A stretch of 30,962 nucleotides of DNA from Macrostomum lignano (taxonomy: Eukaryota), in contig NIVC01004934.1 of the NCBI GenBank assembly GCA_002269645.1, positions 1 through 30,962 of the forward strand, written 5' to 3'. A program made the translations under genes and the position numbers. Shown here piece after piece: positions 2,170-29,805 of the stretch; the stretch's first letter is position 1; each line of letters opens with the position of its first letter. The notes beneath the pieces were generated by a model. It had not been told where the DNA came from, ran no database searches, and was given only the letters and a program-made list of their open reading frames with translations.

Positions 2170-3855
2170 TGTGTGTTAACCTACGACCGGGGTCCCAGCC
2201 CGCCGAGGGCGGCCGACTCCAGAAAGGTGCACTTCTCTATCAGGTTAGTCCATAAGTCACTCGGACAAAGCTGCGTCAGATAGGCGCAGGGCAGTTGAAG
2301 AGGTGGGCCACCGTTTGGGGCTCAAGGCCGCCGCAATCAGGACAAACCGCGGCGACGCCAGGGTTGAGCCTCGAATAAAAAAAAGTCTCGGAGAAACGGG
2401 CAGAAACCGGAGCGAAGCTGCGCCAGCGTGCACCGCACACGGCGGGGAGGCGAACTTCGGAGCGGTGGATCTCAGATCGTTGCGCACGAATGACGCGGTT
2501 CGGTGGCAAACTGTCCAGCATGGCCTATAGTGCCTGCGTGTGTTGGGCCCGCTTGGCGCGATACCAGGCTGCAGCCAGCGTCAAGGACATCCGGGGCTGG
2601 AACCGAACCCAATCGGCGTTAAAATGCTCAGCAGTGAAGATGGAGGCTTTCATGAGTCTACGCAGAGGTGGCAGACAGGAAAGATGGTGGCATGGATGTT
2701 CCGGGCGTCTGGTGCGGAGCTTGAACTGGAGCGAAAGGAGCTGGTTGTGTTGGCGGACGGTGAGCAACTGAACTTCACTGTGTAGATCCGTTTCAGAGGT
2801 AAGGGCTGTGCAGCCGGTGATGCTGCGACTCGCCGCATTCTCGACCGATTGAAGCCGAGTCCAGGACGAGTTCGAGATGATGGGCCCCAGACCGGCGCAG
2901 CGTTGTCGAGCAGACTTCTGCCAAGAGCTTTAAAGGTGTCAGCAAAAGTTCCTTGCAGCAGCCCAGGATGAGGCGGCGAGGCAACGTAGCAGGCTGTTTC
3001 TTTTCCGAGTTTTCTCCACAAAGATGGAGACGTGTCTCGCGAAGGAGAGTTTGGGGTCGAAGTCACGCCCAGAGTTTTCGGATGGAGGACCTGCGGCAGT
3101 GGGGAGCCGTTTATGAAGACATTAAGCTGGCAGAAGTATTCGCGCTGGTCTGGACTGAACAGAGTGGCCGTACACTTTGATGTAGAACTCTGGAGCTTGC
3201 GCGACTCGAGGAACGGAGCGAGTTCAGCGAGATAGTGATTCAGTTGTTGTTCAATGGAATTGCAGCTTGGGGACGAGGCGGCAACGGTAAGATCGTCAGC
3301 GTAGCCGATTAGCTTAGTAGTCGGATTGATGGGCACGGGAGCCTTAGCCAGATAAAAGGCGAAAAGAAGCGGGCTGATGGCGCTGCCCTGTGGTACTTCA
3401 ATGCGAACCTGCCGCCACTTGGACTTAGAGTCTCGCATGAAGGTCCGGGCTTGTCGTCCAAGAATATAGTTGGCGAGCCAGGCCTTAACAGAGTTCGGAA
3501 GATCCGATTCGGCGAGGTCGGAGAGTAATTTGTAATGGTCAACGCAGTCAAACGCCATCCGAAGGTCGATCGCGCCAACGCCGGTCCTGGCCGGGGGTTT
3601 CGACAGGCAGAATCCCGAGCAAATCTGCTCGACCAGTTGGCAGAGGGCGGTCATGGTTGAGTGGTGCGGGCGGAAGCCATGTTGCCAGGCAGGAAGCTGA
3701 AGATGGTCAGTCAGAAGCGGTAGCAGGATCTTCTCCAAGATTTTGGCGAGCGGCGACAGGAAGGAGATCGGGCGGTACGACGCGCCATCGTCCTGCGGTT
3801 TGCCATCTTTCAGAAGGGGACAGATTAAGGACTTCTTCCAGACCGCAGGGATCTC
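2170..3855 (-). mobile_element. Non-LTR retrotransposon (I/Jockey-group-like) ORF2, 3' part: RT, thumb and C-terminal CCHC; frameshifted
   Basis: EIPAVWKKSLICPLLKDGK...SYRPISFLSP, QHGFRPHHST, AIDLRMAFDCVDH, VPQGSAISPLLF, YADDLTV, downstream LDNAAPVW, MLTVRQHNQLL, CPDCGGLEPQTVAHLFNC, and a short (AC)n-like tail near 2168-2178. Confidence 0.95.
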
Positions 3856-4268: not shown

Positions 4269-4516
4269 CCCCTATTGAGAGTCAGCCTGTCTCAGAAATC
4301 CCCATTGAGAGACAGTCTGTCTCAGAAATCCCCATTGAGAGTCAGTCTGTCTCAGAAATCCCCATTGAGAGTCAGTCTGTCTCAGAAATCCCCATTGAGA
4401 GTCAGTCTGTCTCAAAAATCTCCATTGAGAGTCAGTCTGTCTCAGAAATCCCCATTGAGAGTCAGTCTGTCTCAGAAATCCCCATTGAGTCAGTCTGTCT
4501 CAGAAATCCCTATTGA
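4269..4516. repeat. 30-bp minisatellite, about 8 copies
   Basis: Unit CCCCATTGAGAGTCAGTCTGTCTCAGAAAT repeated in tandem; one copy is shortened. Confidence 0.97.
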
Positions 4517-5519
4517 ACTGCCCGAGCGGCTGACTAAGCCGCCGTGTGCCGAAAGCCCCCAGCCTCAGCGCTTGGGAGAACACGGGTGCCGAATTACGAG
4601 GCCTGAGTCGTGAAAGTAACTATTTTATTTTTAGTACGAACTACATAGTAGCTAATACAACAAGGCAGAAGCTAAAGTTATTTATTTATTCACACTATTT
4701 ACGAGCTTAAGCATAAGGTACGGAAAAGTCAAGACTTTTAATCACCGATTTCATTAGAAAGTACCTTAAAATCACAGACAGGCATTGCACAAACAAAAGC
4801 CGAAATGCAGATCAGCTGATTTCTAGTATTTTCTGCACAGTGTATTTGTAATTTTATTATTCTGAGCGCTTGCGCATCATGCTCAAATTGATACTGAAAT
4901 ATTTAGCTATAATCATTAGTCATGCCAATATCGCAGTTATAAATTTTACATCTAAACAGAGTTGGTGAGAATTAGCAGGTTTCTTTTGTCTGATTAAAAC
5001 TATTTGATTAGAAACAAAAATACCATTGAATACTGTCACTCTATCTACTCACATTTTGGAGAATTCGGCTCATACACTGAAGCCAGTGCAAAAACAGATA
5101 ATGATGGCGTCCACGCTATTAATTCGAGTTTTAGGATATGAGAAATAACAATTCGACAGTAATTGGACTTGCGATATCAAAGCAATTTAATACTCGTACA
5201 CTGACTGGGCTGGCTTAGAAATTTAGATTAATTGTGAGCGGATTGAATGCATTGAGCGAATGGTGGGTCAGGCTTGAGAATACTAATTTGGTTTGATTGC
5301 AGTACAGATAATCGTAAATCACAGGTTAAACAGGGGCGGGATACAGCTTAGCTACTTATTGTTGATAGTTCTGACTAAAAAATCCGAGCAGAGGAACGGA
5401 AAGAGCATTTTCTAGAAAACAAATTCAAGGCTACTTGCCAAAATTAAATGAGAAGGAGTGTTTATTTAGCGAGTTTCCAAGCCCAGATCTCCAAGATCGC
5501 TGGTGATTGAACTGCGAGC

Positions 5520-8500
5520 TCACTGGATCAGCCACTGCTGTGCAGATACCGTGAGGACAGCCAGAGAGCAGACGGCTCCAGCACTGAGCCACGCCAGATC
5601 CATCTTTAGTTGAGCCGACGATTTCGTCTGCGTCGAGTTTCGTGACGACGACTTGGCCGTGGAATTGGTCTTGTTCGGGTCATTTGCCAAAGTTTGCGCC
5701 ACGGTCCGGTGGACGTGCGAAGTCAATTGTTTGGTGGTCTGCGTATGATGTACAATATGTACATTGCGTATGGGCATACTGAACTTATGGTTTGTCACGC
5801 TGGTCAATGTTCTGGCCATAGTGGAAGGGAGTAGGCCTAATCGCTTTTCGTCTTCAGCGGCCAAGGGCTTCTCATCTTGAATGTACAATCTATCGATAGA
5901 CACACTGGACACGTTTGCAGCGGATATGGCAATCACTTTTATAAACATCGGAGGTTCATTGAGAGCCATATACTGATTGTAGATGTTCAACGAAGATTGG
6001 TTGGTGACAGCCAGTTCCGGACAGGAGTAATATCCGTTTACAGCGGTGCAGTTTCCACCTGTTTCTCTGTAGCGAAGACTGTAGACAGGCACATCTGTTG
6101 GAGTCAATTCGGATGAACATGAGCGTTAAAAAGAGTGAAATGTGCATGACAGCTGTGCAACAAATACTCGTATTTGGGGCACTGTTTGCTCTTTGAACCA
6201 GATGCCAAAATGTGTTTTGGTTTTATGAAAAAATATTTTTCAATAAAATTCACATTTCAGCTTGTACTTTAGCAGAGCTGCTTCAAGCGTTACACCTACC
6301 TGCTTTAGGCGGGAGTAGACCAGACGGATCTTTAACTGGATTCCATTTGATCTCAATTATTTTACTCGCATAATCTTTTCTGCTTATATAGATCGCCATG
6401 CTTGGCTTAGGAACAATACGACGTCTGTCAAAGTTGGGGTCTTCCGCCTGAACAGTCAAGGTGCCGCCAGACAATTGCATTTGGAACGGGAACGTGATAA
6501 ACACATCGACAGCGTATTGACGAGCTTTCTGTACTGCATAGAGTGGTACCATGGCACTGTATGCTCCTCTATCTGTACAAATGAAGTATGAGCAATATGC
6601 CTTTTAAATCGCTGTTTAACAACAATAGTTTTTGTAAAGCTGCTACTGAATTTTTAGTCTTCACTTACTGTAATATTGTTCAGATAGATTAAATCGAGCC
6701 ACTTCCTTGTTGCTTGCTGTGACAACTGCGTATATTTGATACTTGTGTTGAATCTGAGATCTTGGTAACAGGTTCACGAAGACACCGATTCGAGTATCAT
6801 ACTTGACCATTGTCACATTATTTGGCTTCACCCTACACGTAGTATCTCTGGGCAGTAAGGCAAATTGTCTTCCTGTGATAACTATAGTCATTGTTGAGGC
6901 CGCCTGTCTGCGAATCCGGCGTGCGAGACCGACTGCGAGATTCGTTAGCGTCCACTTTCCGCTCTGTTGGAGTGGCGGGTTACTATTGTTTGGGAATCCT
7001 TAAAGTTGACGGTTCTTAGTACTCGTAATTAACTGCCTAAACTATACCCCCCATTTCGAATTTTTTGCTCCTGAAAGAGCATATTTAGAATTTAGTAACA
7101 CACTGTTACAGTAGCTGTTAAAATATTGGCTTTTTGCTTTGGCACGTAAATTGGCTCAACTGACCTCTACCTCTGCGTCAGGAATTTGCATTGTCACGGA
7201 TCCGACTGCAACATCAACTGTACAAACGGCACTGCTGCCTCCAGAGCAATTGAAAGTCCTACCGCTCGGCGACCGAAACATGAGGCGCAGAGAGCCAACC
7301 TTGGCGGGATCGCTTGGCAGAAACAGCGAGAAGACGAGGTTGCTGCGAGTACTGACGTCGAATTCCACCGGATACGCAGGTCAGAGGGAACTTGCCTCGA
7401 ATCCAGCTGTGGGAACAAGGAACAGTTCGTACGGAGTCAAACTAAGATGGAAGACAATCGGAATGCAACCAGTGCACTACCTAAGCGCATTTGATTTATT
7501 TAGTAACTTAACTAGACACAACACTAAAAATAGTTTGTCGCTTAAGTAGGTTATGTGACTGATTTCAGAAGAATCCCGTTGAGCATATTTTCATAATGCT
7601 GCAGGATCTCATTGGAGCTCTAATCTCACCCATTTCTCCCCTATCTCTATATCATCTCTCCTCCATCTCTCCCTCGCGTATTTTCCATCTTTTGCATCCT
7701 CTCTCCTTTATTTTACTTATCAATTTAAAATTTAAACTTTCATTTTTAATTTCGACCGATACTTGGTAAGCAAAATAAAGGTAGATCAAAATGAGAGCTA
7801 AAGCTCAAAGAGGGTCCTGATATCTTAGCCTGATATAATAGCTGGCTTTCAGAGTTTTTACGTTACGTTAAAACATCATTTACGTTGGGATAATAACAAT
7901 AGCGACTGTAAAAAGTGAAAGGCTGCTTATTGCTAGTGTTAAGAAGACACTTATTTGCTTCAGTAATTAAGTAACATAATGCATTACTACGTTTTGGCTT
8001 TCACGGCCCCCTGAGAATTTTATCCCCGGTCAACAGCAGACTTAAACCCTTACTCAGACAAAAAGAATTTGGCTGTTGTCGATGAATACAATAATAGATG
8101 GTGAAAGAAGCGAAAAGTAATAAATTTTTGTCGAGCAAGCTTCACAATAGAATTCACCCCAACTCACGACGACGGTCTTGTTCACGCCAGCGAGACCAGA
8201 CTGTAGTGAGGTGAACTCCAGTATTAGTTTGGACGCTGCAAGCTTGCTGTCGACCGGACTATATAGCTTGCGACCGTCCGTGACGTCGGCAAGAAGCGAC
8301 ATCCGCATGTCCGCACTGTCACCGAACCGAATGGTGTCGACTCTGAGGCTCGTTTTCGATATCGCATCGATGGTAGAGTTCAGCTTGCTGCTGCAGCCTT
8401 CCTGACCATCTGAGACCAAAAGTATCTGACCACTCGATCGATGAGTTGGACTTGTTACGTTCTCACCTAGCAGCTGGGTGATTTGATTGAGAAGTAGGGG

Positions 8501-10888
8501 ATTCAGTCAGTGGTACCTGACCTGGACTATGGCTTGACTAAGAATCTGACTGTGCGTAAATCTGTTAAATGACCAAATCACTGACCTTCATAGCCTCTTG
8601 AACAGCTCCACCGATGCAGGTGCTTCCTCCGGCAGTCAGTTTCGAGACGGATTGCATCAGCTGACGTCGAACAGCCGGTGAGTCAACCAGGATGAAATTT
8701 TGCAGCACAGTGGGTCCGCTAGTAAAGCTGATCAGGGCGCACTCTGACCCGGTCTTCAGAGTGAAGGCAATGTAATTGTTCACTGCATTAATCAAATTTT
8801 GCATTCGGTTGTCCTGAATGGGTCCAAAATGAGTTAGAATGAGTTATTGGTGGATAGTAATCTTTGTGTACTTTTGAAATTGACTTTTTAATTGAATAAA
8901 TATAGTCACCTCTTTTGAGCATGTCATTATGAAAAAACTCTTCCACTTGATCCCAAAAATTTGAAAAGGTTACAAAGTTACAAAGAGCAGAGCATGGAAA
9001 GGAAGTGATGCAACTGAGACAAAGCAAGCGGCTTCTCACCGAACGCATGCTACTCGATGTATCCATGACGATCACAACACGGTCTCTTTTGGGTTCAACC
9101 ACTAGACGAAAGTTGAACTTTGAGTTCACTATAGTAGCAGAGCTGATAGGCCGTAGAAAATCCTCGTGGTCTCTGATGACCTCCGCAGCGCTGCGTGCAT
9201 TGCAAAATTTGTTGAGTAAGTTGTCGGCATCCTTGTTGTGCCTGTGCCTGGTGTCGGAGACCTTAAAGTCCGCATCGCAGAAGCGGGTCACTCCGGCGCT
9301 GTAGGGCTCGAACAGGAACGAGGCAACGTTGGAGTACGCAGGCTCGGTCACCACGATTTTGCAGTTGGGTTCGCCGAATTTGCAGCTGCGTCCGGTTTGA
9401 TTGCCGCTGGCCACTTCCAGCTTCACCTGCAGGTCCGGGTTGCAGGAAGAGAGCCTGGGAAGAACTCTGTTATACGAATCCTTGCTCTTCTGTATCGGGT
9501 TACTCAATGGGTCTTCGCTGAACAGGCCCCAGCGGAACTGCGAAAAGTACAGAGCCATAGTCCTGGCCACCGCTGTGGGATGTGCGGATCAGGGTGGAGC
9601 CGTGGCAGCAATGGGGAAAAGCGTGGCTTGTTAAAGTTGAGGGACTTTTTTAACTCAATCAAGTTTCTTAATTGTTTTGTCTCGACATGAAAATATTTGA
9701 AGAAAAAAATGTTAGCTGCTCATACTTTTCCGCTTCAGTTCTTTTATTCATGGCAGTGGATGAAAATACACTAGATTAGCTACACATTTAACCGTTTAAT
9801 TTAAAATTAACTGTTTAATGATTCTATTTCGGCAAGTAGATCTTCAATTTTATTTTCTATATTTAGCTACTTCAACCATTATTCAATTTCGTCAATAGGA
9901 TATTCTATTTCATGCAAAATAGAATAGGATATTTTATTTCATTTTCTTGATGTTTTTATTTTTTCAAATACATACTGAGGAGGTTTTTTTACGGACAAGT
10001 TGGGCCTGATTTTTTGTTGCATTTCTTTAAGTTTGTTCTCTTCACCAATTTTGTTCCATTCATAACAGTCATGTACATGTACAAGGCAGGAGAGGGGAAA
10101 TTGAATGGGAAATCTGCATGCGGGAGCTAAATGTAGCTAAATGCACTTAATGCAGAATGGTGAAATTGAATGTCATCTTGCCGGAATGGAATGTGAGCTT
10201 TGTTGAAGTTGAACTGAAAATGTGTAGTTAGTATTTTTTATCTATATATAGTTTTATCTAACCTAGAGAATCTATTAAGCATCAACAATATGAAGCATCA
10301 AGAGAATTCTTACATTTGTAGATGTTGCTGGACTCGAGACTCTTGGTCGAGAGTTTCACTTTTTCTGCTTGAGCTCCGCAGAAGAAGTCTTCCCACACTA
10401 CACCCTCATCAGACTCCTTGATGTCTGGAGAGACAACGAAATCCGCGTTCTCTGGCCGCTGCCACGTCGCTGGGTGCAGCTGAAGCCTCGAATTGTTCGA
10501 TTCGGCGAGCTTCTCACCCAGACTGTGCGGCAGCAGCACGCTGACCTCGCCGAAGCCGAGACGGCGGCCCACAGTATGGGTGAGCTTCTCCAAGATGTCC
10601 GAGGCCTCCCGAAGGGCGGTCTGAAAGGTCAAAGCAGCACTGGATATTCTCCCAGACTTCAGTTTCAATATCACACAATCCTAGCGTATTATGCCTCACC
10701 TGCAGCACATGAAGTAGATGAGCATAGTGCTTCTCCTGCACGTTGCCGTCTGCAGGTATTTGCACAAAGACTAGCAAGTCGTTATAGTAGCCGTCATCAG
10801 CGAGATGCAGTTTGCTTGACGCATCGAGCTGGATGCAAAAAGCAGCCAGAAAAGTCATGAAGATTGTGCTGACGTTTTTTAGCCTCAT
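5520..10888 (-). CDS. CLCA: CLCA-family (calcium-activated chloride channel regulator-like) secreted/membrane-anchored protein, ~990 aa, 9 exons, with a degenerate protease motif
   Basis: GT-AG exons: 10888-10700, 10620-10314, 9572-9040, 8813-8586, 8473-8168, 7406-7171, 6963-6669, ~6600-6300, 6094-5520. Domain order: signal peptide; CLCA N-terminal domain (GYYNDLLV, FGEVSVLLP, RWGLFSE, VTRFC, HNKDADN..NKFC, EVIRDHEDF); vWA (RVVIVMDTSSSM, GGSTCIG, LLVSDGQE); beta domain (FRSPSG, DAESGKWT); SGGTLTV plus FnIII-like (IEIKW, YSLRY); Ser/Thr stalk; hydrophobic C-terminus. There is a 1-nt frameshift near 7375 and the exon 7/8 phase is unresolved. Confidence 0.92.
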
Positions 10889-11354
10889 GTTTAAGGATTC
10901 TGTGCAGATAAAAGTTGGCAGAATTTCTATACTGAGCGTTGGCTCTGCAACAGATGAACTGGGGCTGGCAGGCAACTCAGCTCGAAGCGAAGCCGCTCCT
11001 CTCGATCTCGACCTGTACTCGCCTCAGAGCCATGGGAGTTTCAGCCACAGACAGAAATTCTGCTGAGCTGCCGGCTTAAAGCTTCGTGCATAAATTTATT
11101 GCTGTATAAAAGTACTTTTAGACGAAACTCCAAAACAGGGCGGCTCGAGCGGCAGTAAGCGGCAAATAGTCTATGGGCCTGAGGGCGGTCAGGCTTAGGA
11201 AACAGGTTCAAGTTGAACTTGGGATAACAAAATATCAAAGCAGACAGTGCTTTTCAGTGAAAGAGTGAGGAAAGAACAAGATGTACTTTTATTAATCGTT
11301 GTCATTCTTGAAATTACTTTAATAACAAATTAAGCCATGAGAATCAGGCAATGA

Positions 11355-11700
11355 GGCAAACAAAGCGGCGTTTGGCGAGCAAGAGGCGGATAAGCTGCGC
11401 GGCAGCATAAATAGGCAGGCAGCCTCACAGTTTAAACCCGTTTGAAATGGTGGCTCCTTCATGTTTAACATGATGGCACTTTTATGTTTGAAATGGTGGC
11501 TCTTTTATGTTTGACATGGTGGCTCTTTCATGTTTGAAATGGTGGCTCTTTTATGTTTGACCCTCACAGTTTAAACCCCATCACCCCGCACCACGTACAT
11601 TGGCAAGCGACTGAACGCGCAGAGTAGTGGACACAATAAACCATGAGGATCTGGAAAGGCAAGAAGGCAAACAAAGCGGCGTTTGGCGAGCAAGAGGCGG
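11355..11700. repeat. ~36-bp direct repeat pair downstream of the tyrosine recombinase (possible DIRS/Ngaro terminal repeats)
   Basis: GGCAAACAAAGCGGCGTTTGGCGAGCAAGAGGCGGA occurs at about 11355-11390 and 11667-11701. The repeat is seen directly; the DIRS interpretation is inference. Confidence 0.7.
11440..11561. repeat. 23-bp tandem array (~5 copies) flanked by a 17-bp direct repeat
   Basis: Unit GTTTGAAATGGTGGCTCTTTTAT; CCTCACAGTTTAAACCC occurs at 11423-11439 and 11562-11578. Confidence 0.92.
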
Positions 11701-11814: not shown

Positions 11815-12425
11815 GCCCGAGACTTGCGGGCAACAGAATCACCGTCACTGAAGAAGTAGCGCTTCACACAGTCAGAGCGCCAGTCACCCAGGGCCATGAT
11901 ATCAGGCAAGGCCACCCACCCCTTCCTGCAGGGCAAAGCTGGCCCCACCGCGCCGCAGGCTGTGGCCGGAGAAGGTGGACGGGTTGAAACCGCAGTTACG
12001 CAGTGCCTGCCGCAGAAGCGGGGTCAGCATACGAGGCTTCAAACGCAGCCTCCGCGAGCCCACGAGGTAGGAGAACAACGGGACGGTGGCGCCGATGCAG
12101 GCCGCACCGGCCAGGTAGGGCAGCTGCACCGTGCGGACACGCTGGCCGAACTGGTTGGTCTTGGACCGCTGCAGCTGCAGCACCAGCCCAGAACCGGAAC
12201 AGGACAGATGGCTAGAGCGCAGCAGGTCGCCGACTCGGATCAGCTCCCACCAGGCCACCAGAAAGGCGGCGCAGAATGCAGACCACAGCTAGGTTCGGAG
12301 CGAAGCCTCGACGGGCCGCAGGGTCGCTCGCAAGCCGCCGCAGGTGAGCAGGCTCGAGCGCCGTCGCCTGCTTGGTCTGTAGCCCCAGGAAGCGCCGAGC
12401 GCCCCTTAAAAGGAACTGCAGCCGT
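11815..12425 (-). mobile_element. Tyrosine recombinase of a DIRS/Ngaro-type retrotransposon, 5'-truncated and frameshifted
   Basis: LLRGARRFLG...Q; AFLVAWWELIR (catalytic R); RSKTNQ (K); FSGHSLRRGGASFA (HxxR); after a frameshift, IMALGDWRSDCVKRYF (W and catalytic Y). Confidence 0.88.
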
Positions 12426-13329: not shown

Positions 13330-14150
13330 CCCTTACCACCAACACAGTGGCAAGGGTAACAGGAACTCTTTCTGAAAGCCCTTGCTGCATTCGCCATTTT
13401 CCATGCAAGGGCACACCGGATTCTCCTGCCGCAGGGGCCATGGATCATGTGCGTCTTCACCAGCTCATAGAGCACGGGCTGCTGCTCTGAAATCTCGGCA
13501 GACACGATGTCATCGTATCGGTCCGGAGTCACCCGCTGACCGCTCGTGAGCCATAGCATATTATGGATAATTTATTTCGCAAAATATGTTTTAAAATATC
13601 TCGCAGACTTACTAAATGTGTTCACCAGATGGTCGACGGTCAGGGTGAATCACAATTCGCGCATCTCCCAACTGCGGATCATGGCTGATTCGATGAGCGA
13701 CTGCCTTCAGGCTGTGGACATAGCCGTTGCACTCGTGAAGCAGCGTCTGCAGCAGCTCCGGTAGCTCTGGCTTCACCTTCTGGCTGAGACTCTGGCGGCT
13801 TTCAAGTTCGCGATCGTTGAAATACACCTGCCAGCCATGGGGCTCAGCTGAATCCTCTGCAAACAGCGGCGCCGTGTTGTGATGCAACTGGCCGCTGATG
13901 ATGAAGCTGGGACTCCAGTCTGGTACCAACCGCAGTTTGGCTCCCAGCGACGTCAGGTGCAGCCCCGAGTTGTAACTTCTAATGTTGGTTAGGAACTCGG
14001 CACTCATTCTGCGCCGCCCCAGGTACAGATCCGCCAGCACTTGAAGCACTGTGCGTCTGGGCAGCTTCACCTCGCCTTTGGCGTAGCAGAAATTCCTCGT
14101 CTCAGAGCACCAAAGTAATGCACCGCATTGGTCGCATGCTCTGTCCATTG
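13330..14150 (-). mobile_element. Helitron Rep N-terminal fragment with an internal deletion removing most of the HUH core
   Basis: MDRACDQCGALLW..E...GEVKLP, FLTNIRSYNS...TSLGA, ISGQLHH, QVYFND, ECNGYVHSLK, IVIHPDRRPSGEH, joined across a short AT-rich stretch to LWL..VTPDRYDDIVSAEI..VLYELVKTHMIHGPCG. Confidence 0.9.
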
Positions 14151-20544: not shown

Positions 20545-22475
20545 TAAGACCTCATGGAGCATGCAGATTCTCATACTGCTGCAGGACCTCATGGAGCATG
20601 CAGAATCCCATACTGCTGCAGGACCTCATGGAGCATGCAGATTCTCATACTGCTGCAGGACCTCATAGAGCATGCAGAATCCCATACTGCTGCAGGACCT
20701 CATGGAGCATGTAGAATCCCATACTGCTGCAGGACCTCATAGAGCATGCAGAATCCCATACTGCTGCAGGACCTCATGGAGCATGTAGAATCCCATACTG
20801 CTGCAGGACCTCATGGAGCATGCAGAATCCCATACTGCTGCAGGACCTCATGGAGCATGTAGAATCCCATACTGCTGCAGGACCTCATTGAGCATGTAGA
20901 ATCCCATACTGCTGCAGGACCTCATGGAGCATGCAGAATACCAAACTGCTGCAGGACCTCATGGAGCATACAGAATCCCATACTGCTGCAGGACCTCATG
21001 AAGCATACAGAATCTCATACTGCTGCAGGACCTCATGGAGCATGCAGAATCTCATACTGCTGCATGACTTCATGGAGCATGCAGAATCCCATACTGCTGC
21101 ATGACTTCATGGAGCATGCAGAATCCCATACTGCTGCAGGACCTCATGGAGCATACAGAATCCCATACTGCTGCAGGACCTCATGGAGCATGTAGAATCC
21201 CATACTGCTGCAGGACCTCATAGAGCATGCAGAATCCCATACTGCTGCAGGACCTCATGGAGCATGCAGAATCCCATACTGCTGCAGGACCTCATGGAGC
21301 ATGCAAAATCCCATACTGCTGTAAGACCTCATGAAGCATACAGAATCCCATACTGCTGCAGGACCTCATGAAGCATACAGAATCCCATACTGCTGCAGGA
21401 CCTCATGGAGCATGCAAAATCCCATACTGCTGTAAGACCTCATGGAGCATACAGAATCTCATACTGCTGCAAGACCTCATGGAGCATACAGAATCCCATA
21501 CTGCTGCAGGACCTCATGGAGCATACAGAATCCCATACTGCTGCAGGACCTCATGGAGCATGCAGAATCTCATACTGCTGCAGGACCTCATGGAGCATGC
21601 AGATTCTCATACTGCTGCAGGACCTCATGAAGCATGCAGAATCCCATACTGCTGCAGGACCTCATGGAGCATGCAGAATCCCATACTGCTGCAGGACCTC
21701 ATGAAGCATACAGAATCTCATACTGCTGCAGGACCTCATGGAGCATGCAGAATCTCATACTGCTGCATGACTTCATGGAGCATGCAGAATCCCATACTGC
21801 TGCAGGACCTCATGGAGCATACAGAATCCCATACTGCTGCAGGACCTCATGGAGCATACAGAATCCCATACTGCTGCAAGACCTCATGGAGCATACAGAA
21901 TCCCATACTGCTGCAGGACCTCATGGAGCATACAGAATCCCATACTGCTGCAAGACCTCATGGAGCATACAGAATCCCATACTGCTGCAGGACCTCATGG
22001 AGCATACAGAATCCCATACTGCTGCAAGACCTCATGGAGCATACAGAATCCCATACTGCTGCAGGACCTCATGGAGCATACAGAATCCCATACTGCTGCA
22101 GGACCTCATGGAGCATACAGAATCCCATACTGCTGCAAGACCTCATGGAGCATACAGAATCCCATACTGCTGCAGGACCTCATGGAGCATACAGAATCCC
22201 ATACTGCTGCAAGACCTCATGGAGCATACAGAATCCCATACTGCTGCAGGACCTCATGGAGCATACAGAATCCCATACTGCTGCAAGACCTCATGGAGCA
22301 TACAGAATCCCATACTGCTGCATGACTTCATGGAGCATGCAGAATCCCATACTGCTGCATGACCTCATGGAGCATGCAGAATCCCATACTGCTGCATGAC
22401 TTCATGGAGCATGCAGAATCCCATACTGCTGCATGACTTCATGGAGCATGCAGAATCCCATACTGCTGCAGGACA
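20545..22475. repeat. 37-bp satellite array, about 52 copies
   Basis: Unit GCATGCAGAATCCCATACTGCTGCAGGACCTCATGGA with point variants. The ORFs over it are repeat artefacts. Confidence 0.98.
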
Positions 22476-24698: not shown

Positions 24699-25255
24699 CT
24701 GTGCAGATTCAGGCACAGTCATTGCCAGTTCCCTTCTGCCTGTCTCTCCAATCGCGCACTCAACCTTCCCCAAACTCTTCCCCATCTATACCATCTCTTC
24801 CCCTTCTCTCTCCCATTTTTTCTCGATCTTTACTCTATCTCTCCAATCTCCCCCATCTCTCTCATCTCTCCAACTTTCACCCATCTCATCTCCTATCTCT
24901 CCTTCAACACTCCCCATTTTTACTCCATACCTCCCATCTCTCTCGAATTTCCCATTCTCGCATTCTGTTCCCATCTCTCACTCCTTTTGTCGCCCATTTC
25001 TCTCTCATCCCTCTCTCATCTCCCTCATCTCTTCCCATCTTTCTCGCATTTCTCCTCCATCTCCCTACCATATCTTTCCCGTATCTTTCCCATATCTCAC
25101 GTATCTTTTCTCTACTGTCTCTCGATTTTCCCTCCAACTCCCCATCTCTCTCCCATTCTCTCAGCCATCTCTCACCGTCTTCCTTCCCCCGAGTTCTCCA
25201 CCGTCTCTCCCCTCCGTCCCCCAACTCTTTCCCGATCTCTCCTTCAACTTCACCT
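24699..25255. repeat. CT-rich polypyrimidine low-complexity tract (right part)
   Basis: Same composition as 22960-23851; resumes after the MITE. Confidence 0.9.
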
Positions 25256-25504: not shown

Positions 25505-28500
25505 ATGAGGCATCTCGCTGCTGCATTCGCATTGCTGGCGGTGTCGCTCTGCTCAGCTGTGGCTTTGCCGGTCGCGTTGGCGCCCTTTCTATCCAAGGCT
25601 GCCATCATGACTGTAGCCAGAGACGCTGCCATTAACTCTGTCGTAAGCTCGCTTGTAGACAAAGTCTTGAACGGCGGCGGCGGCGGTGGCGGCGGCGCTG
25701 GTGGCGGCGGCGGCAATTTGATCACCAGCTTGGTCAATTTGAGAAAACAGAACGAAGAAACGCTCAACGAGATGATGAAGTCTGTCGGCACCGCACCGAA
25801 TCCGCTCATCACCCAGGAATCGATGAATAAAATGGTCAAAGACTGGTCCCTCCAACCACAGAAGGCGGGAACTCGCTCCATCAGCCTGCAGGCCGATCAG
25901 GGCTTTAACGGACTCGGAAACTACCAGCCTCCAGGATGGGTGATGACGGAGACTTTGAGCGGCCCAGCGAACAAAATACCGCAAATGACGGACGAGAAAG
26001 TACCGGTGTATCAATATCCGAAGGGAGTGGGTCCGATGCTGATGAACGGCTGTACGGGTCAATTCTATTCAAAAAGTAGTCCCTGCAACTCCAGCAAGCT
26101 CGCTGCTCAGGGACACGCAGTCTGCCCGAACCTCCTGGAAGCCGCCGCCTACGTGGGCGTAGGTTTCGACGGTCGCGGCTTCTACAAAATCGAGAGCCGC
26201 AGGGCCAGCCTAGTGCAGCGTTACTGCTCCAACAAGGCCAGCTTCCAAAAAAAGACGTTCCCGACTCGATGAACGTGTTCGGCATCTTTGAGACTACGGC
26301 AGAGACCAAGTCCTTCCAGTCTGGAGGGGAATACATGAACTACATCAGAGAGAAGGCCGGCCTGTCAAAACAGAGGAATCTATTTCGCAGTGAGGCCAGC
26401 AAGCACAGCACTTCCGTTTCAGCAACTATCAGCGCTTTTAGCATTTCCTCTGCTTCAAGTGCGACCGGTTACGGCGAATCGTCCTCGGTAAAATCTGGTG
26501 AATCGGTCTCGGAAAATGTTCAGACTGAGAGTTCCAATATGCGGCAGGGGGCTTCTAATACCTTTTTCGCCATCATGTATGTCAGCGTCATCATGTACGA
26601 GATCACTCTGGATGATGTGAAGCCGCAAGACATCAACTTGGCTGCTCTCAAGGACTACATGAGCTTGCCGGAGTCCTACTACTCGGTTGGCGCTGACGTC
26701 AAGTACCAGAACTTTCTGCTTCGCTGGGGCACGCACTTTATTCGGTCTGGAAAGTTTGGCGGCCAGTTGAAGATCACAAAGACTGCGAAGATGAACAAAG
26801 TAAAGTCTGTGGCGGAGTTCGCCAGCATCGCCGAGACAGAGTTCCAGTCAATGTTTGCGTCACTGCAGTCCAGGCACCTGCAGACAACAAGCAAAGTTAG
26901 CACTCCTTTTTATGGCGGACAGATAAAGTCTGAACATCAAAGCTCATCGGCAAAATCCGGAAATAGTCGCGTCAGCACAATGAACCAGAAAAACCAGCTA
27001 TCTCAGAGCTCAAGCCAATCCGAGTTCACTCAAACTAGCGTCGAAGCTCAAGGAGGAACGCCGGAGATCGCGGAGGCTCTCGTCGACTTTTACACGCCAT
27101 CGTTCAAGTCTTTGTATCACAAATGGATCGTCTCAATCAGCGACTACGTGAAGCCGTTCGAGTTCCAGCTAAAGCCCATCGACCAGCTGTTCAATATGAA
27201 CATGGACGACCTTTTCCTGTCTGGGAACTTCGATTTTGGCTGCATGGGAGGGCTGGCAGCAGTAACAAAGTAAAGATTTTGGTGGAGCCTGGAACCAATC
27301 GCAGATACCATCTTGATGAGCAGACTGAATTCCGAGACAACCGGACTGAGACTAGACTAGTGAAGACCTACTGCAAGTACAGAGACCTGAATGAGTTCAA
27401 GACTGATCTGGACAGGCGAACAATCTCTCTGGAGAAAGCAGTTGCGGTCTACATGGCAGAAGGTCCGTTTCCGACGTCAACCTACGAGCTGGAAGCTGGG
27501 CAGTCTGGCTGCGAAGAGAAGACCTTGGCTCAAATCGACACACTGGACTCCAAGTCAAAGCCTCTGACTTTTCTGCAGCTCAAAACAGCGCCGTTTCTAA
27601 TTTCATTTGACCTGCCTGAGGAGATACCAAATTTGCTGCAAAGACAAGCAAAGTACGCTGTGGTCTATCGAGGAGACAGATGGTTTGCCACTGAGCCAGG
27701 AAGCCATCTTGCTCACTTGTATGACGGTTGCCAATTGGGCAACTACAAGCTTGAAGAGCGTAAGAGCAAACCAAAAATCTGCATTTGGAACATTATCCTC
27801 ACCTATGAGAACAACACGGCTTTTTCTACATTGACCACAATGACTTTTCTGCATCTAAACGCCGCAACCCGTTGATTCCGGGCTGGATGTCTGGCTTAAC
27901 CGTGGCCAGAGCTTCAAGTCTGAGCATATCGAAGGACCCTGCCTCGACTCCCGAGTCAGTGCCGTGCAACGTGAAGTGGCTAAACTCCCACAGACTCGAT
28001 CCCAGCAAGAATGAGAGCTGTCTGCACTTTACGGCCGCCACTGAGGGAGACATCTTTGTGATTTTTGCATCCATTCCAAGAGATCAGTCAACGTGGTACT
28101 ACCTGCAGATCAATGCAGAGGGTGTTCTGTTTTACAAGCAATGAAGCTGAAAAAGCGCGACGAAAATAGGGGCATGGGGACACTGGGAGACAGGAACCTG
28201 TACCAGTCCTACTTTGTGTGCGTACTCCAGTCCAGTGGCTCAGTTCTGATGCAGTTTGGAAAGGCAGATGCCACAAGTGAAGTCGGCACTGTCTACTCTG
28301 GCTACAAGTTTCCGCAGGACAGCCAGTACAGTCGTTTATCTTTCTATACATTTGGCGCAGGCTCAAGGCCAGTGTCTCTGATGGACATTCGACTCACCAA
28401 GCAGATGCCAAAGGTTCGATGCTTGAATAATAACTACAAACAGGTGGATGGTCACTGCGTCCTTGACTGTCATGCAGAGTGTATCGACTGCACTTTAGCA

Positions 28501-29340
28501 AATGATGACACCAGCTGTTTCCAGTGTCGCAATGTCCGGATTGTGACGAAAAGTTATACTGGTGACTTAGTAGTAAAATGCTTACCAGTGTGTCCGAGGG
28601 GCTTCCAACTAAGCGACAGGGCTGAGAAGCTGTGTGTTCCATGCAGCCCTGGCAGCTTCAAGAACTCAACAGGCAACCAGAACTGCACGCCATGTGATCC
28701 TGGTACCTTCACCGAGTCTGAAGCACAAACAGAGTGCAAAAAGTGCAGCCCAGAACTTTTACTGCCAACTGGAGATCTCAAACGTGCAAGAAGTGCGCAG
28801 AGGGCACGTCAGCGGCCTCAAAAGGATCTGTTTTGTGTAGGCCCTGCAGCCCCGGCTCGTTCGCGCAAGTTGGTCAGGCACAATGCACTCCCTGTCCGCT
28901 CGGCCAGTTCAACAGCGTAGATGGACAGTCTCGGTGCCAGCTGTGCTCTGTGGGCTATTTTGCTGCCACCGGGCCTCACTTCTTGGATCCGTGTCCCAAC
29001 GGAACAACAGTACAGCGGGCTCAGCGAGTTGCGAAAACCACTGCAGAAGGGGAGAGTTCAGTCCGAGCAAAGGCATCCCATGCAGAAAGTGTTCGGCCGG
29101 TACATTTGCAGCCAGTATGGGCGCGAAACTGCACATTGTGCCCCGCAGGCACATTCGGTCAAGAGACGGCCAGTCGGCATGCACAGAGGCTCCGGCAGGA
29201 TCGTACGTCGGCATGCACAGAGGCTCCGGCAGGATCGTACGTCCCACTTGCTGGATCGACAAGCAGCACTCCGTGTCGATGGGCACCTTCAACCCGTAAA
29301 CTGGAAAGTCCAGACGTCTGACTGCTCTCAGAAGGGGCAG
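25505..29340 (+). CDS. Secreted MACPF (perforin-like) multidomain protein with C-terminal furin-like and GCC2/GCC3 (ephrin-receptor-like) Cys repeats; apparently intronless; frameshifted in this sequence
   Basis: Signal peptide MRHLAAAFALLAVSLCSAVA; poly-Gly; YVGVGFDGRG..(D)VPDSMNVFG; exact MACPF signature WGTHF-x6-GG (WGTHFIRSGKFGG); Ser-rich TMH-like segments; PFEFQLKPI; then CHAECIDC and repeated C-x2-C-x-PG(S/T)F-x8-C. Frameshifts near 26250, 27255, 27868, 28140 and 28750, more after 28990. The true 3' end is uncertain. Confidence 0.88.
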
Positions 29341-29531
29341 CATATAGGTGATAAAGTTTGCCGAAGTCGCAGTGTATGGAGTGTGACCCTCGACTTTTGG
29401 TAACAAAAGCTAATTGGAAGCTTCGGTTTGGAAACTGACTCAGATTTGACTAATTCTTCATCAGCATGAATTTACTGCAGCAAACACAGCAATCTGATTT
29501 GTGAGCTTTTTTACCATTGCTAATTCTGCCT

Positions 29532-29805
29532 CGCATTCTCCGCCATGCAAATTACATGATTCACTTTAAATCAGCTCTGATTCTCCCTCACATTCTCCGC
29601 ATGCAAATTACATGATTCACTTTAAATCAGCTCTGATTCTCCCTCACATTCTCCGCCATGCAAATTACATGATTCTCTTTAAATCAGCTCTGATTCTCCC
29701 TCACATTCTCCGCCATGCAAATTACATGATTCTCTTTAAATCAGCTCTGATTCTCCTCACATTCTCCGCCATGCAAATTACATGATTCTCTTTAAATCAG
29801 CTCCA
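29532..29805. repeat. ~57-bp tandem repeat, about 5 copies
   Basis: Unit CACATTCTCCGCCATGCAAATTACATGATTCTCTTTAAATCAGCTCTGATTCTCCCT. Confidence 0.95.

What the first reader, a model, noticed from the sequence alone, without database searches (positions are those of the whole stretch)
9520..9572. CLCA with the HExxH zinc-protease motif replaced by LYFSQ: a candidate pseudo-protease
Seen: exon 3 begins SVARTMALYFSQFRWGLFSE. Established: CLCAs read R-x-F-V-H-E-W-A-H-L-R-W-G-V-F-D-E, and this HExxH metalloprotease self-cleaves the protein, which is needed for TMEM16A regulation in human CLCA1. Anchoring on RWG, both His ligands and the catalytic Glu are lost (H>L, E>Y, H>Q). The flanking Cys scaffold, the vWA MIDAS (DTSSS, T, D) and the splice phases are retained. 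Inference: an uncleaved, adhesion- or mucus-type CLCA under selection for a non-catalytic role.
Basis: partly seen in the sequence, partly recalled or inferred. Interest (0 to 1): 0.7.

Follow-up and report, generated by a model that had tools for sequence, protein, structure and literature searches.

The report
Flatworm CLCA with dead protease site
This is a gene of the flatworm Macrostomum lignano from the CLCA family of self-cleaving zinc proteases that has lost its zinc-binding catalytic residues and the loop it would cut; inactive CLCAs of this kind are already described, so it is a clear but fairly ordinary example.

Summary
A 9-exon minus-strand gene (10888-5520) encodes a CLCA-family protein: Pfam CLCA_N at 57.7 bits, plus a VWA domain. 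Exon 3 starts at 9572 and reads SVARTMALYFSQFRWGLFSE, with LYFSQ (9552-9538) in place of HExxH.

The third zinc ligand (D167>S), Y169 (>D) and the Met-turn Met (M238>L) are also replaced. The ~40-residue loop that holds the autocleavage site in CLCA1 is missing. The structural second-zinc site (E168, C187, C250, H255), the Cys scaffold and the VWA MIDAS are kept.

The window is a whole 30,962-bp contig of Macrostomum lignano. The dead site is shared by a monophyletic clade of paralogs in that species (LYFSQ, LHFSQ, LFFSQ, RELSI). The same genome also has canonical HEWGH paralogs that keep the loop.

dN/dS is 0.39-0.42 against the distant paralog and 0.65 against the nearest, so the gene is constrained but weakly. 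No alternative exon supplies HExxH.

Two caveats apply. This copy has a 1-nt deletion in exon 6 that truncates the annotated protein, and it could be real or an assembly error. CLCAs with substituted active sites were already described by Lenart et al. 2013. Verdict: a real pseudo-protease and a new member of a known kind, of modest interest.

The parts
5520..10888 (-). Whole CLCA-family gene. It has 9 exons with all introns GT-AG, an ATG at 10888-10886 and a TGA stop at 5522-5520. The conceptual product is about 983 aa.
   Evidence: Exon model and splice sites. tblastn of M. lignano paralogs covers every exon. Pfam finds CLCA_N plus VWA. It is the only CLCA gene in the window.
10700..10888 (-). 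Exon 1 (63 codons, ends in phase 0). The N-terminal hydrophobic stretch MRLKNVSTIFMTFLAAFCIQLDA looks like a signal peptide.
   Evidence: The signal peptide is inferred by inspection; no predictor was run.
10314..10620 (-). Exon 2 (307 nt, ends in phase 1), encoding the N-terminal beta-sheet part of the metallohydrolase-like domain.
9040..9572 (-). Exon 3. It holds the active-site helix remnant, the Cys-rich C-terminal subdomain of the protease-like domain, and the start of the VWA domain (MIDAS DTSSS at 9063-9049).
9511..9552 (-). LYFSQFRWGLFSED, the counterpart of the CLCA1 motif HEWAHLRWGVFDEY. Changes: H156>L, E157>Y, H160>Q, D167>S (9519-9517), Y169>D. Kept: R162, W163, G164 and E168 (9516-9514).
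   Evidence: Alignment and site table, hmmalign tabulation and coordinates. Ligand identities come from the CLCA1 cryo-EM preprint.
9313..9315 (-). Leu at the position of the Met-turn Met238 (ASFLF against ASIMF/Y).
   Evidence: In the survey, Leu at this position occurs in 21 of 54 substituted sequences against 1 of 96 intact ones.
9238..9444 (-). Retained ligands of the structural second zinc site: Cys (C187 equivalent, 9444-9442), Cys (C250 equivalent, 9279-9277) and His (H255 equivalent, 9240-9238). E168 also belongs to this site.
8168..8813 (-). Exons 4 (8813-8586) and 5 (8473-8168), the rest of the VWA domain. MIDAS Thr is at 8621-8619 and MIDAS Asp at 8410-8408.
   Evidence: Pfam VWA_2, VWA_3 and VWA. 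Alignment to the CLCA1 VWA crystal structure 6pyo. Coordinates.
7165..7406 (-). Exon 6 (242 nt, not a multiple of 3). One G is missing between 7375 and 7374 compared with the paralog (CTGCGGTATCC against CTGC-GTATCC). Read literally, the frame hits TGA at 7196-7194. With the shift, the frame continues open to the normal stop.
   Evidence: The NCBI model PAA46316.1 ends at this premature stop.
6300..6963 (-). Exons 7 (6963-6669) and 8 (6572-6300), the BSR and inhibitory-domain homologues. At 6498-6484 (..VFI-TFPF-QMQLSGG) beta6 runs almost directly into beta7, so the ~40-residue extension with the autocleavage site is absent. The DNGAGAD Ca2+-loop is also absent at about 6690-6672.
   Evidence: Alignments, spacing count of 45-47 against a median of 87, and the role of the loop.
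5520..6094 (-). Exon 9: an FnIII-like domain, a Ser/Thr/Asn-rich stalk and a C-terminal hydrophobic segment (LAWLSAGAVCSLAVLTVSAQQWLIQ) that looks like a membrane or GPI anchor.
   Evidence: The anchor is inferred by inspection.

Best explanation
The gene belongs to a Macrostomum lignano-specific clade of CLCA paralogs in which the metzincin-type protease domain is catalytically dead.

All three ligands of the catalytic zinc (H156, H160, D167), the general base E157, the nearby Y169 and the Met-turn Met are replaced. The inhibitory-domain loop, which in CLCA1 sits in the active site and is cut there, has been deleted.

The parts that give the fold and bind ligands are kept: the disulfide scaffold, the structural second-zinc site, a complete MIDAS in the VWA domain, the BSR/ID/FnIII-like domains, a signal peptide and a C-terminal hydrophobic anchor.

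The most likely product is a single-chain cell-surface glycoprotein that does not self-cleave. It would act by binding, through metal-dependent VWA contacts with the dead protease domain as a scaffold or substrate-like decoy, alongside the catalytically intact CLCA paralogs encoded in the same genome.

Shown: homology, the residue losses, the loop deletion, the shared ancestry of the loss, and purifying selection across the clade. Inferred: absence of catalysis and of self-cleavage, surface location, and a binding role.

The copy in this window additionally has a 1-nt deletion in exon 6. That is either a very recent disabling mutation or an assembly error.
For: - **Family membership.** CLCA_N scores 57.7 bits and the VWA domain is present. 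The VWA aligns to CLCA1 structure 6pyo with the MIDAS residues kept.
- **Catalytic residues.** The site table gives H156L, E157Y, H160Q, D167S, Y169D and M238L, with E168, C187, C250 and H255 kept. The roles of these residues come from the CLCA1 cryo-EM preprint.
- **No hidden motif.** No HExxH occurs in any frame of the gene region.
- **Loop deletion.** The beta6-beta7 extension with the cleavage site is absent in the window gene and in paralog A, P0004, P0009 and P0016. It is present in every canonical CLCA aligned, including the M. lignano canonical paralogs P0031 and P0172. Anchor spacing is 45-47 residues against a median of 87 (range 60-108) in 46 intact CLCAs.
- **Shared ancestry.** The clade is monophyletic in 100 of 100 neighbour-joining bootstraps, and its nearest neighbours all carry HExxH. 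P0031 and its relatives are M. lignano proteins with HEWGH...D.
- **Selection across the clade.** Omega against the P0004 gene is 0.39 overall and 0.42 for the protease-like domain (range 0.29-0.57). The 9-exon structure and intron phases are identical in that paralog.
- **Selection against the nearest paralog.** Omega is 0.65 (0.53-0.82). Introns carry 12 indel events in 617 aligned nt, against 2-3 in about 1.9 kb of exons. The window lineage is not accelerated: 37 against 32 lineage-specific replacements, p = 0.63.
Against: - Nothing here tests catalysis, cleavage, zinc content, expression or location.
- Omega against the closest paralog is high (0.65; VWA 0.85). For exon 3 alone its range includes 1.
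- dS against P0004 is near saturation (0.9-1.2), so that omega is rough.
- The only structure model was useless (pLDDT 34), so the geometry of the former active site is unknown.
- The exon-6 frameshift means the protein as encoded in this assembly stops after about 590 residues.
- The neighbour-joining tree is a simple distance tree. Support for P0031 as the sister group was not assessed.
Confidence: 0.8

Rival explanations
1. This particular copy is a decaying pseudogene. The exon-6 deletion is real, the protein is truncated after the VWA domain, and the unusual motif has no present function in this locus.
For: There is a 1-nt deletion relative to the paralog in exon 6, with a premature TGA at 7196-7194. 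The NCBI model of this contig is truncated there. Omega against the nearest paralog is relaxed at 0.65. The gene sits among transposon remnants and satellites on a short contig.
Against: - This is the only lesion. All splice sites, the start and the stop are intact, and 447 codons downstream of the shift stay open.
- Omega downstream of the shift (0.61) is no higher than upstream (0.74).
- The lineage shows no rate acceleration against the intact paralog.
- Exons carry far fewer indels than introns.
- The contig shows a second frame change, at an A7 run in an unrelated MACPF gene, which suggests assembly indels. Models from the other assembly are full of frame hops.
- The dead motif long predates this lesion, because intact paralogs share it.
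Confidence: 0.35
2. The protein is still processed, but in trans. Catalytically intact CLCA paralogs (P0031 type) or other proteases cut it, so it functions as a cleaved two-chain CLCA despite its dead site.
For: M. lignano encodes canonical CLCAs with HEWGH, D167 and the loop.
Against: The segment that carries the canonical cleavage site is deleted in the whole inactive clade, so there is no homologous site to cut. No data on processing exist.
Confidence: 0.08
3. The domain is still a hydrolase that uses a non-canonical set of residues, for example the retained E168/C187/C250/H255 metal site.
For: A four-ligand zinc site is fully conserved.
Against: In CLCA1 that site is structural and sits at the base of helix alphaC. 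It is conserved equally in active and inactive CLCAs. No general base or open coordination position is evident. The Met-turn and substrate loop are lost.
Confidence: 0.03
4. The missing HExxH is an artefact of gene modelling: a wrong exon, a wrong frame, or an alternative exon 3.
For: The public models of this family are poor, with chimeras, frame hops and a 17-nt non-canonical micro-intron in PAA46316.1.
Against: - Six-frame search finds no HExxH anywhere in 5400-11100. The single HExxH in the window, at 2654-2640, lies outside the gene and next to stop codons.
- The motif lies inside one continuous Pfam alignment.
- The same junction and motif occur in at least 8 independent paralog models from two assemblies.
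Confidence: 0.01

Closest known systems
Canonical CLCA proteins (human CLCA1, CLCA2, CLCA4; 'CLCAsin' metzincins)
   Same: Same domain order: signal peptide, metallohydrolase-like CLCA_N domain with Cys-rich subdomain, VWA with a complete MIDAS, BSR, inhibitory-domain homologue, FnIII-like domain and C-terminal hydrophobic tail. The R-W-G turn, E168 and the structural zinc ligands C187, C250 and H255 are conserved.
   Different: H156, E157, H160, D167, Y169 and M238 are all replaced. The ~40-residue beta6-beta7 extension with the autocleavage and inhibitory loop is deleted. The DNGAGAD Ca2+ loop of the inhibitory domain is deleted in this subgroup. Identity to canonical CLCAs is low: about 72 bits at best for a 310-position profile.
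CLCA_N domains with substituted active sites (Lenart, Dudkiewicz, Grynberg and Pawlowski 2013, PMC3650047)
   Same: This is the same phenomenon: CLCA homologues whose HExxH is replaced in a conserved, lineage-specific way, with several independent origins. In my survey, 54 of the 150 sequences that cover the motif are substituted. These come from Ciona, Homarus, Petrolisthes, Watersipora, Saccoglossus, Ptychodera, Orchesella, Amia and a sea urchin.
   Different: The commonly reported changes are partial and polar (H1>R, H5>K, E>Q; for example REWAK, HQWGH). Those I could measure keep the cleavage loop, with spacing of 72 or more. The flatworm clade replaces every catalytic position with L/Y/F/S/Q and has also lost the loop. 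I did not find a flatworm example described in that paper's text.
Catalytically inactive ADAMs (for example the LQxxL or HQxxH ADAMs of sperm-egg interaction), named as an analogy in PMC3650047
   Same: They are metzincin-fold ectodomains that lost the HExxH zinc site and persist as membrane-anchored binding proteins next to active paralogues.
   Different: They belong to a different family (M12 reprolysin against CLCA_N). They bind through disintegrin and Cys-rich domains rather than a VWA MIDAS. This is an analogy only, and nothing was tested here.
M. lignano canonical CLCA paralogs (P0031 = PAA61566.1, P0171, P0172, P0173)
   Same: Same species and same architecture. P0031 is the nearest non-clade neighbour in the neighbour-joining tree.
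   Different: They keep HEWGH, D167, the Met-turn Met, the DNGAG loop and a ~40-residue beta6-beta7 extension.

Membership tests
CLCA family (homology and architecture) | CLCA_N domain (PF08434) above Pfam's gathering score | tested here: met
   57.7 bits against a cut-off of 25.6, E 1.7e-15, residues 30-306 on profile positions 4-261 of 266.
CLCA family (homology and architecture) | VWA domain with a complete MIDAS (DxSxS...T...D) directly after CLCA_N | tested here: met
   VWA_2, VWA_3 and VWA all match. Alignment to the CLCA1 VWA structure 6pyo keeps D-T-S-S-S, T and D.
CLCA family (homology and architecture) | BSR, inhibitory-domain and FnIII-like regions C-terminal of the VWA | tested here: met
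   There is no Pfam hit, but the region aligns block by block with 14 CLCAs (SPSG.., G.W..Y.V.V, SGG, PP..I.DL, W...GDD-like).
CLCA family (homology and architecture) | Structural second zinc site (E168, C187, C250, H255) | tested here: met
   All four residues are conserved. The site is defined in bioRxiv 10.1101/2025.10.18.683246. Metal binding itself was not tested.
CLCA family (homology and architecture) | Secretory signal and C-terminal membrane or GPI anchor | tested here: inconclusive
   Hydrophobic N- and C-termini were seen by inspection. No predictor was available.
Active CLCA metalloprotease (metzincin 'CLCAsin') | HExxH: two His zinc ligands and the Glu general base | tested here: not met
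   LYFSQ at 9552-9538. No HExxH occurs elsewhere in the gene.
Active CLCA metalloprotease (metzincin 'CLCAsin') | Third zinc ligand Asp167 and Tyr169 of the G..DEY motif | tested here: not met
   FSED in place of FDEY: D167>S and Y169>D.
Active CLCA metalloprotease (metzincin 'CLCAsin') | Met-turn methionine (M238) | tested here: not met
   Leu at 9315-9313.
Active CLCA metalloprotease (metzincin 'CLCAsin') | Inhibitory-domain beta6-beta7 extension carrying the autocleavage site | tested here: not met
   Deleted. The beta6-to-FnIII spacing is 47 residues against a median of 87 (minimum 60) in 46 intact CLCAs.
Active CLCA metalloprotease (metzincin 'CLCAsin') | Self-cleavage or proteolytic activity | not testable with these tools
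   This needs expressed protein.
Substituted-site (inactive) CLCAs, as in Lenart et al. 2013 | CLCA_N domain with a replacement at H, E or H of the motif | tested here: met
   All three positions are replaced.
Substituted-site (inactive) CLCAs, as in Lenart et al. 2013 | The substitution is conserved across related sequences, that is, not a one-off lesion | tested here: met
   LYFSQ occurs in at least 4 paralog types, LHFSQ in 2, LFFSQ in 1 and RELSI in 3. The clade is monophyletic in 100 of 100 bootstraps.
Substituted-site (inactive) CLCAs, as in Lenart et al. 2013 | Maintained by purifying selection | tested here: met
   Omega is 0.42 (0.29-0.57) for the domain against P0004. It is weaker against the nearest paralog, 0.65 (0.53-0.82).
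Plain pseudogene (this copy) | Frame-disrupting lesion | tested here: inconclusive
   The assembly has one 1-nt deletion in exon 6. Whether it exists in the animal cannot be checked without reads.
Plain pseudogene (this copy) | Neutral evolution (omega about 1, accelerated lineage, indels as in introns) | tested here: not met
   The omega range of 0.53-0.82 excludes 1. Lineage-specific changes are 37 against 32. Exon indels are far rarer than intron indels.

The most novel reading that the evidence does not exclude
In one flatworm lineage, a CLCA duplicate lost in concert both halves of its intramolecular enzyme-substrate pair: the catalytic zinc centre with its Met-turn, and the inhibitory loop that is cut. 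It kept the structural zinc site and the MIDAS, and then expanded into a family of at least 10 surface proteins next to still-active paralogs. That would be a natural experiment separating the proteolytic and non-proteolytic (VWA and scaffold) functions of CLCAs. The coupled loss of the loop has not, to my knowledge, been reported for inactive CLCAs.
Probability: 0.55. Interest if true: 0.4.

Novelty: new member of a known kind. Interest (0 to 1): 0.3.

Why it matters
CLCA biology is split between a protease role (self-cleavage, possibly mucin processing) and a binding role (VWA-dependent regulation of TMEM16A and similar channels). A clade that has erased the protease centre and its own cleavage loop, but keeps the MIDAS and the fold, shows that the non-catalytic part can be maintained alone. 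M. lignano is a transgenic, RNAi-amenable animal in which active and dead paralogs could be compared.

For genome annotation, these proteins should not be labelled as metalloproteases or chloride-channel regulators by homology alone. The public models of this family in M. lignano are fragmentary or chimeric. Beyond that, the case adds one more lineage to an already described pattern.

Tried and rejected
- **Word-indexed protein searches.** The full-length query returned only four M. lignano proteins. A 210-aa query across the frameshift, meant to find an intact allele in read-derived assemblies, returned nothing, even though known paralogs contain the region. A four-sequence profile again returned only M. 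lignano proteins. The exhaustive representatives search was what gave the family survey.
- **First representatives submission.** I repeated it with paralog rows.
- **PDB search.** A profile of the protease-like domain found no solved structure. Only the CLCA1 VWA (6pyo) matches by sequence.
- **AlphaFold2 model.** The intact paralog P0004 with a 6-sequence alignment gave mean pLDDT 34 and pTM 0.29, which is unusable. I therefore ran no fold search and make no claim about active-site geometry. Canonical CLCAs could not be added to the alignment under the tool's input rule.
- **Regex spacing count.** It mis-anchored for the window and P0002. I counted the window spacing by hand from the alignment (47 residues).
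- **Ancient inactive subfamily.** I considered whether the clade descends from an old REWAK/FSE-type inactive CLCA subfamily shared with other phyla, and rejected it. Its nearest neighbours by distance are all HExxH proteins, and its neighbour-joining sister is the canonical M. lignano P0031.
- **Second CLCA copy in the window.** tblastn finds none.
- **Literature.** A search for this gene or for flatworm CLCAs found only a 2012 list of ion-channel homologues.
Full report
**What is at the coordinates.** The feature lies on the minus strand. Three-frame translation and inspection of splice sites give a 9-exon gene. The exons are 10888-10700, 10620-10314, 9572-9040, 8813-8586, 8473-8168, 7406-7165, 6963-6669, 6572-6300 and 6094-5520. 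Every intron is GT-AG, the start is an ATG and the stop is TGA. Exon 3 starts at 9572 in phase 1 and reads S-VARTMALYFSQFRWGLFSED, so LYFSQ is at 9552-9538. The conceptual protein of about 983 aa matches Pfam CLCA_N (PF08434) at 57.7 bits against a cut-off of 25.6, over residues 30-306 in one stretch. It also matches VWA_2, VWA_3 and VWA. Its VWA aligns to the crystal structure of the human CLCA1 VWA (6pyo) with the MIDAS residues in place.

**Where it comes from.** The closest proteins are all from the flatworm Macrostomum lignano. One of them, PAA46316.1 (BOX15_Mlig016365g2, 531 aa), is recorded on a contig of exactly 30,962 bp and is identical to the window's exons 3-6. The window is therefore a whole contig of assembly GCA_002269645.1. 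It holds only this one CLCA gene.

**How complete the loss is.** I numbered an alignment of the window protein, four M. lignano paralogs and 14 other CLCAs on a mammalian CLCA1 fragment. That fragment's residues 156, 157, 160, 168, 169, 187, 238, 250 and 255 match the published human numbering. The CLCA1 cryo-EM preprint assigns the following roles:
- The catalytic zinc is held by His156, His160 and Asp167.
- Glu157 is the general base, with Tyr169 nearby.
- Met238 forms the Met-turn.
- A second, structural zinc is held by the Glu of DEY, Cys187, Cys250 and His255.

The window protein has L, Y, Q, S, D and L at positions 156, 157, 160, 167, 169 and 238. It keeps R162, W163, G164, E168, C187, C250 and H255. 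A six-frame scan finds no HExxH anywhere in 5400-11100.

**The substrate loop is gone too.** In CLCA1 the autocleavage site (Gly694|Ala695) lies in a long extension between strands beta6 and beta7 of the inhibitory domain, and that extension plugs the active site. In alignments of the C-terminal halves, every canonical CLCA has 40-75 residues between the '..Y.V.V' strand and the '..R..SGG.F' strand. The window protein, paralog A, P0004, P0009 and P0016 go from one strand to the next in about four residues (..VFI-TFPF-QMQLSGG, 6498-6484). The spacing from the DGxYS motif to the PPxxIxDL motif is 45-47 residues in the clade, against a median of 87 (range 60-108) in 46 HExxH-bearing CLCAs. Other substituted CLCAs keep 72 or more (the window value was counted by hand). 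The window, paralog A and P0004 also lack the DNGAGAD calcium loop of that domain, whereas P0009 and P0016 keep it. Loss of enzyme and intramolecular substrate together is the strongest sequence-level argument that these proteins are not self-cleaved.

**Family context.** An exhaustive profile search of 1.84 billion representatives found 237 relatives. Apart from the M. lignano fragment P0010 (103.5 bits), the non-Macrostomum relatives score about 72 bits or less, so the clade is very divergent. The 150 sequences that cover the motif comprise the hits, their cluster members and the window protein. Of these, 96 have HExxH and 54 do not. The substituted ones come from tunicates, crustaceans, a bryozoan, hemichordates, a springtail, a bowfin and a sea urchin. 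This pattern is already published. Lenart et al. [quoted passage not shown] Leu at the Met-turn position is found in 21 of the 54 substituted sequences but in only 1 of the 96 intact ones, which fits real loss of function.

**Within M. lignano.** The dead-site proteins (LYFSQ, LHFSQ, LFFSQ, RELSI) form a clade in 100 of 100 neighbour-joining bootstraps. The clade's nearest neighbours all carry HExxH. Its sister in the tree, P0031, is itself an M. lignano protein with HEWGH...D, the Met-turn Met and a full-length loop, and it has three close relatives. The flatworm therefore has both active-type and dead-type CLCAs, and the dead type arose by duplication within the lineage.

**Selection.** A second contig (L001) carries paralog A (the gene behind P0002, exons 3-9 intact) and the P0004 gene in tandem. 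The P0004 gene has the same nine exons and intron phases as the window gene.
- Against P0004, Nei-Gojobori omega is 0.39 overall and 0.42 for the protease-like domain, with a bootstrap range of 0.29-0.57. dS is about 0.9-1.2, so this estimate is approximate.
- Against paralog A, omega is 0.65 (0.53-0.82). By region it is 0.57 for exon 3 (0.30-1.16), 0.85 for the VWA, and about 0.6 for the remaining exons.
- Intron divergence (K = 0.28) is close to dS (0.245). Introns carry 12 indel events in 617 aligned bases, while about 1.9 kb of well-aligned exons carry two or three.
- With P0004 as outgroup, the window lineage has 37 private replacements and paralog A has 32 (p = 0.63).

Together these results show long-term purifying selection on the dead domain and relaxed but real constraint since the last duplication. 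They give no sign that the window copy has been drifting as a pseudogene.

**The frameshift.** Exon 6 is 242 nt long. Compared with paralog A, the window lacks one G (CTGCGGTATCC against CTGC-GTATCC, between 7375 and 7374). Read literally, the frame ends at TGA 7196-7194, which is where PAA46316.1 ends. With the shift, the remaining 447 codons are open and align to the paralogs. I cannot tell whether the deletion is real.
- In favour of an assembly error: it is the only lesion. Downstream omega (0.61) is no higher than upstream (0.74). An unrelated MACPF gene on the same contig changes frame exactly at an A7 run. Models from the other assembly hop frames repeatedly.
- In favour of a real lesion: the site is only a GG dinucleotide, and the gene sits among repeats on a short contig.

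I put the chance that it is real at about one in three.

**Mechanism.** The best-supported reading is a secreted, membrane- or GPI-anchored, single-chain CLCA-like glycoprotein. Its metzincin domain serves as a zinc- and disulfide-stabilised scaffold, and its VWA MIDAS binds a partner. It would act beside catalytically competent paralogs, either as an independent binding protein or as a decoy. The residue losses, the loop deletion, the conservation and the selection are shown. Lack of catalysis and of cleavage, surface location and a binding function are inferred.

**What failed.** Two of the three word-indexed protein searches were uninformative. No solved structure of the protease domain is in the PDB copy. 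The AlphaFold2 model built from six close paralogs was unusable, with pLDDT 34.

**Verdict.** This is a real and well-defined pseudo-protease CLCA. It is a new member of an already described kind, a flatworm-specific clade that is unusually thoroughly decommissioned. The copy in the window may itself be broken. Interest is modest.

Noticed in passing
window 7374-7375 (exon 6, minus strand); premature TGA at 7196-7194: There is a single-base deletion relative to the paralog (CGG>CG) that shifts the frame of exon 6. The NCBI protein PAA46316.1 stops at the resulting stop codon. All downstream exons stay open in the shifted frame.
   Followed up: yes
window 10384-10400 and 10700-10722 (minus strand): The deposited model PAA46316.1 starts at an internal out-of-frame ATG (MLIYFMCC...). 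It reads exon 2 in the wrong frame and returns to the true frame through a 17-nt 'intron' with non-canonical ends (ta...tc). This looks like an artefact of mapping a paralog's transcript. The true ATG at 10888 gives an open frame with a signal peptide.
   Followed up: partly
window 25505-29400 (+): A second gene encodes a signal-peptide-like start and a MAC/perforin domain (PF01823, 55 bits, ORF 26269-27273, with the W-G-T-H-F...G-G signature). It is followed by Cys-rich ephrin-receptor-like/TNFR-like repeats (28093-29321). The MACPF reading frame changes exactly at an A7 run (26247-26253) with no intron signals. That is either a frameshift or an assembly indel.
   Followed up: partly
window 2650-3738 (-): This is a reverse-transcriptase ORF (RVT_1, 80.8 bits) from a retrotransposon remnant just downstream of the CLCA gene. 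The only HExxH string in the whole window (2654-2640) lies at its edge, next to stop codons.
   Followed up: partly
window 20548-22474; 29523-29803; 4270-4516; 11440-11560: These are tandem repeats: a 37-bp satellite with 52 copies (it creates long artefactual ORFs), a 57-bp repeat with 5 copies, a 30-bp repeat with 8 copies and a 23-bp repeat with 5 copies. The 57-bp unit is also present as a multi-kb array in L001 (17-23 kb), next to the paralogous CLCA pair. A strongly C-rich stretch (GC skew about -0.5) lies at 23-25 kb.
   Followed up: partly
L001 1-3931 and 10001-15269 (contig NIVC01002494.1): Two dead-site CLCA paralogs lie in tandem on the same strand, about 6 kb apart: the P0002-type gene and P0004. 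A third CLCA-like C-terminus lies on the opposite strand at about 24996-25190. The chimeric UniProt model P0001 suggests that, in the other assembly, a window-type copy directly follows a P0002-type copy. The family is therefore organised in tandem clusters.
   Followed up: partly
window ~6672-6690 (exon 7 end, minus strand) and the homologous positions in L001: The DNGAGAD calcium-binding loop of the inhibitory domain is deleted in the window gene, paralog A and P0004. It is retained in the more distant dead-site paralogs P0009 and P0016. The clade therefore seems to have lost CLCA features stepwise.
   Followed up: partly
window 11902-12258 (-) and 13612-14148 (-): These ORFs have the look of mobile-element proteins (a ...GHSLRRGGAS... 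stretch reminiscent of tyrosine recombinases, and a Cys-rich N-terminus). Neither has a Pfam match at E<=0.01, so their identity is open.
   Followed up: partly
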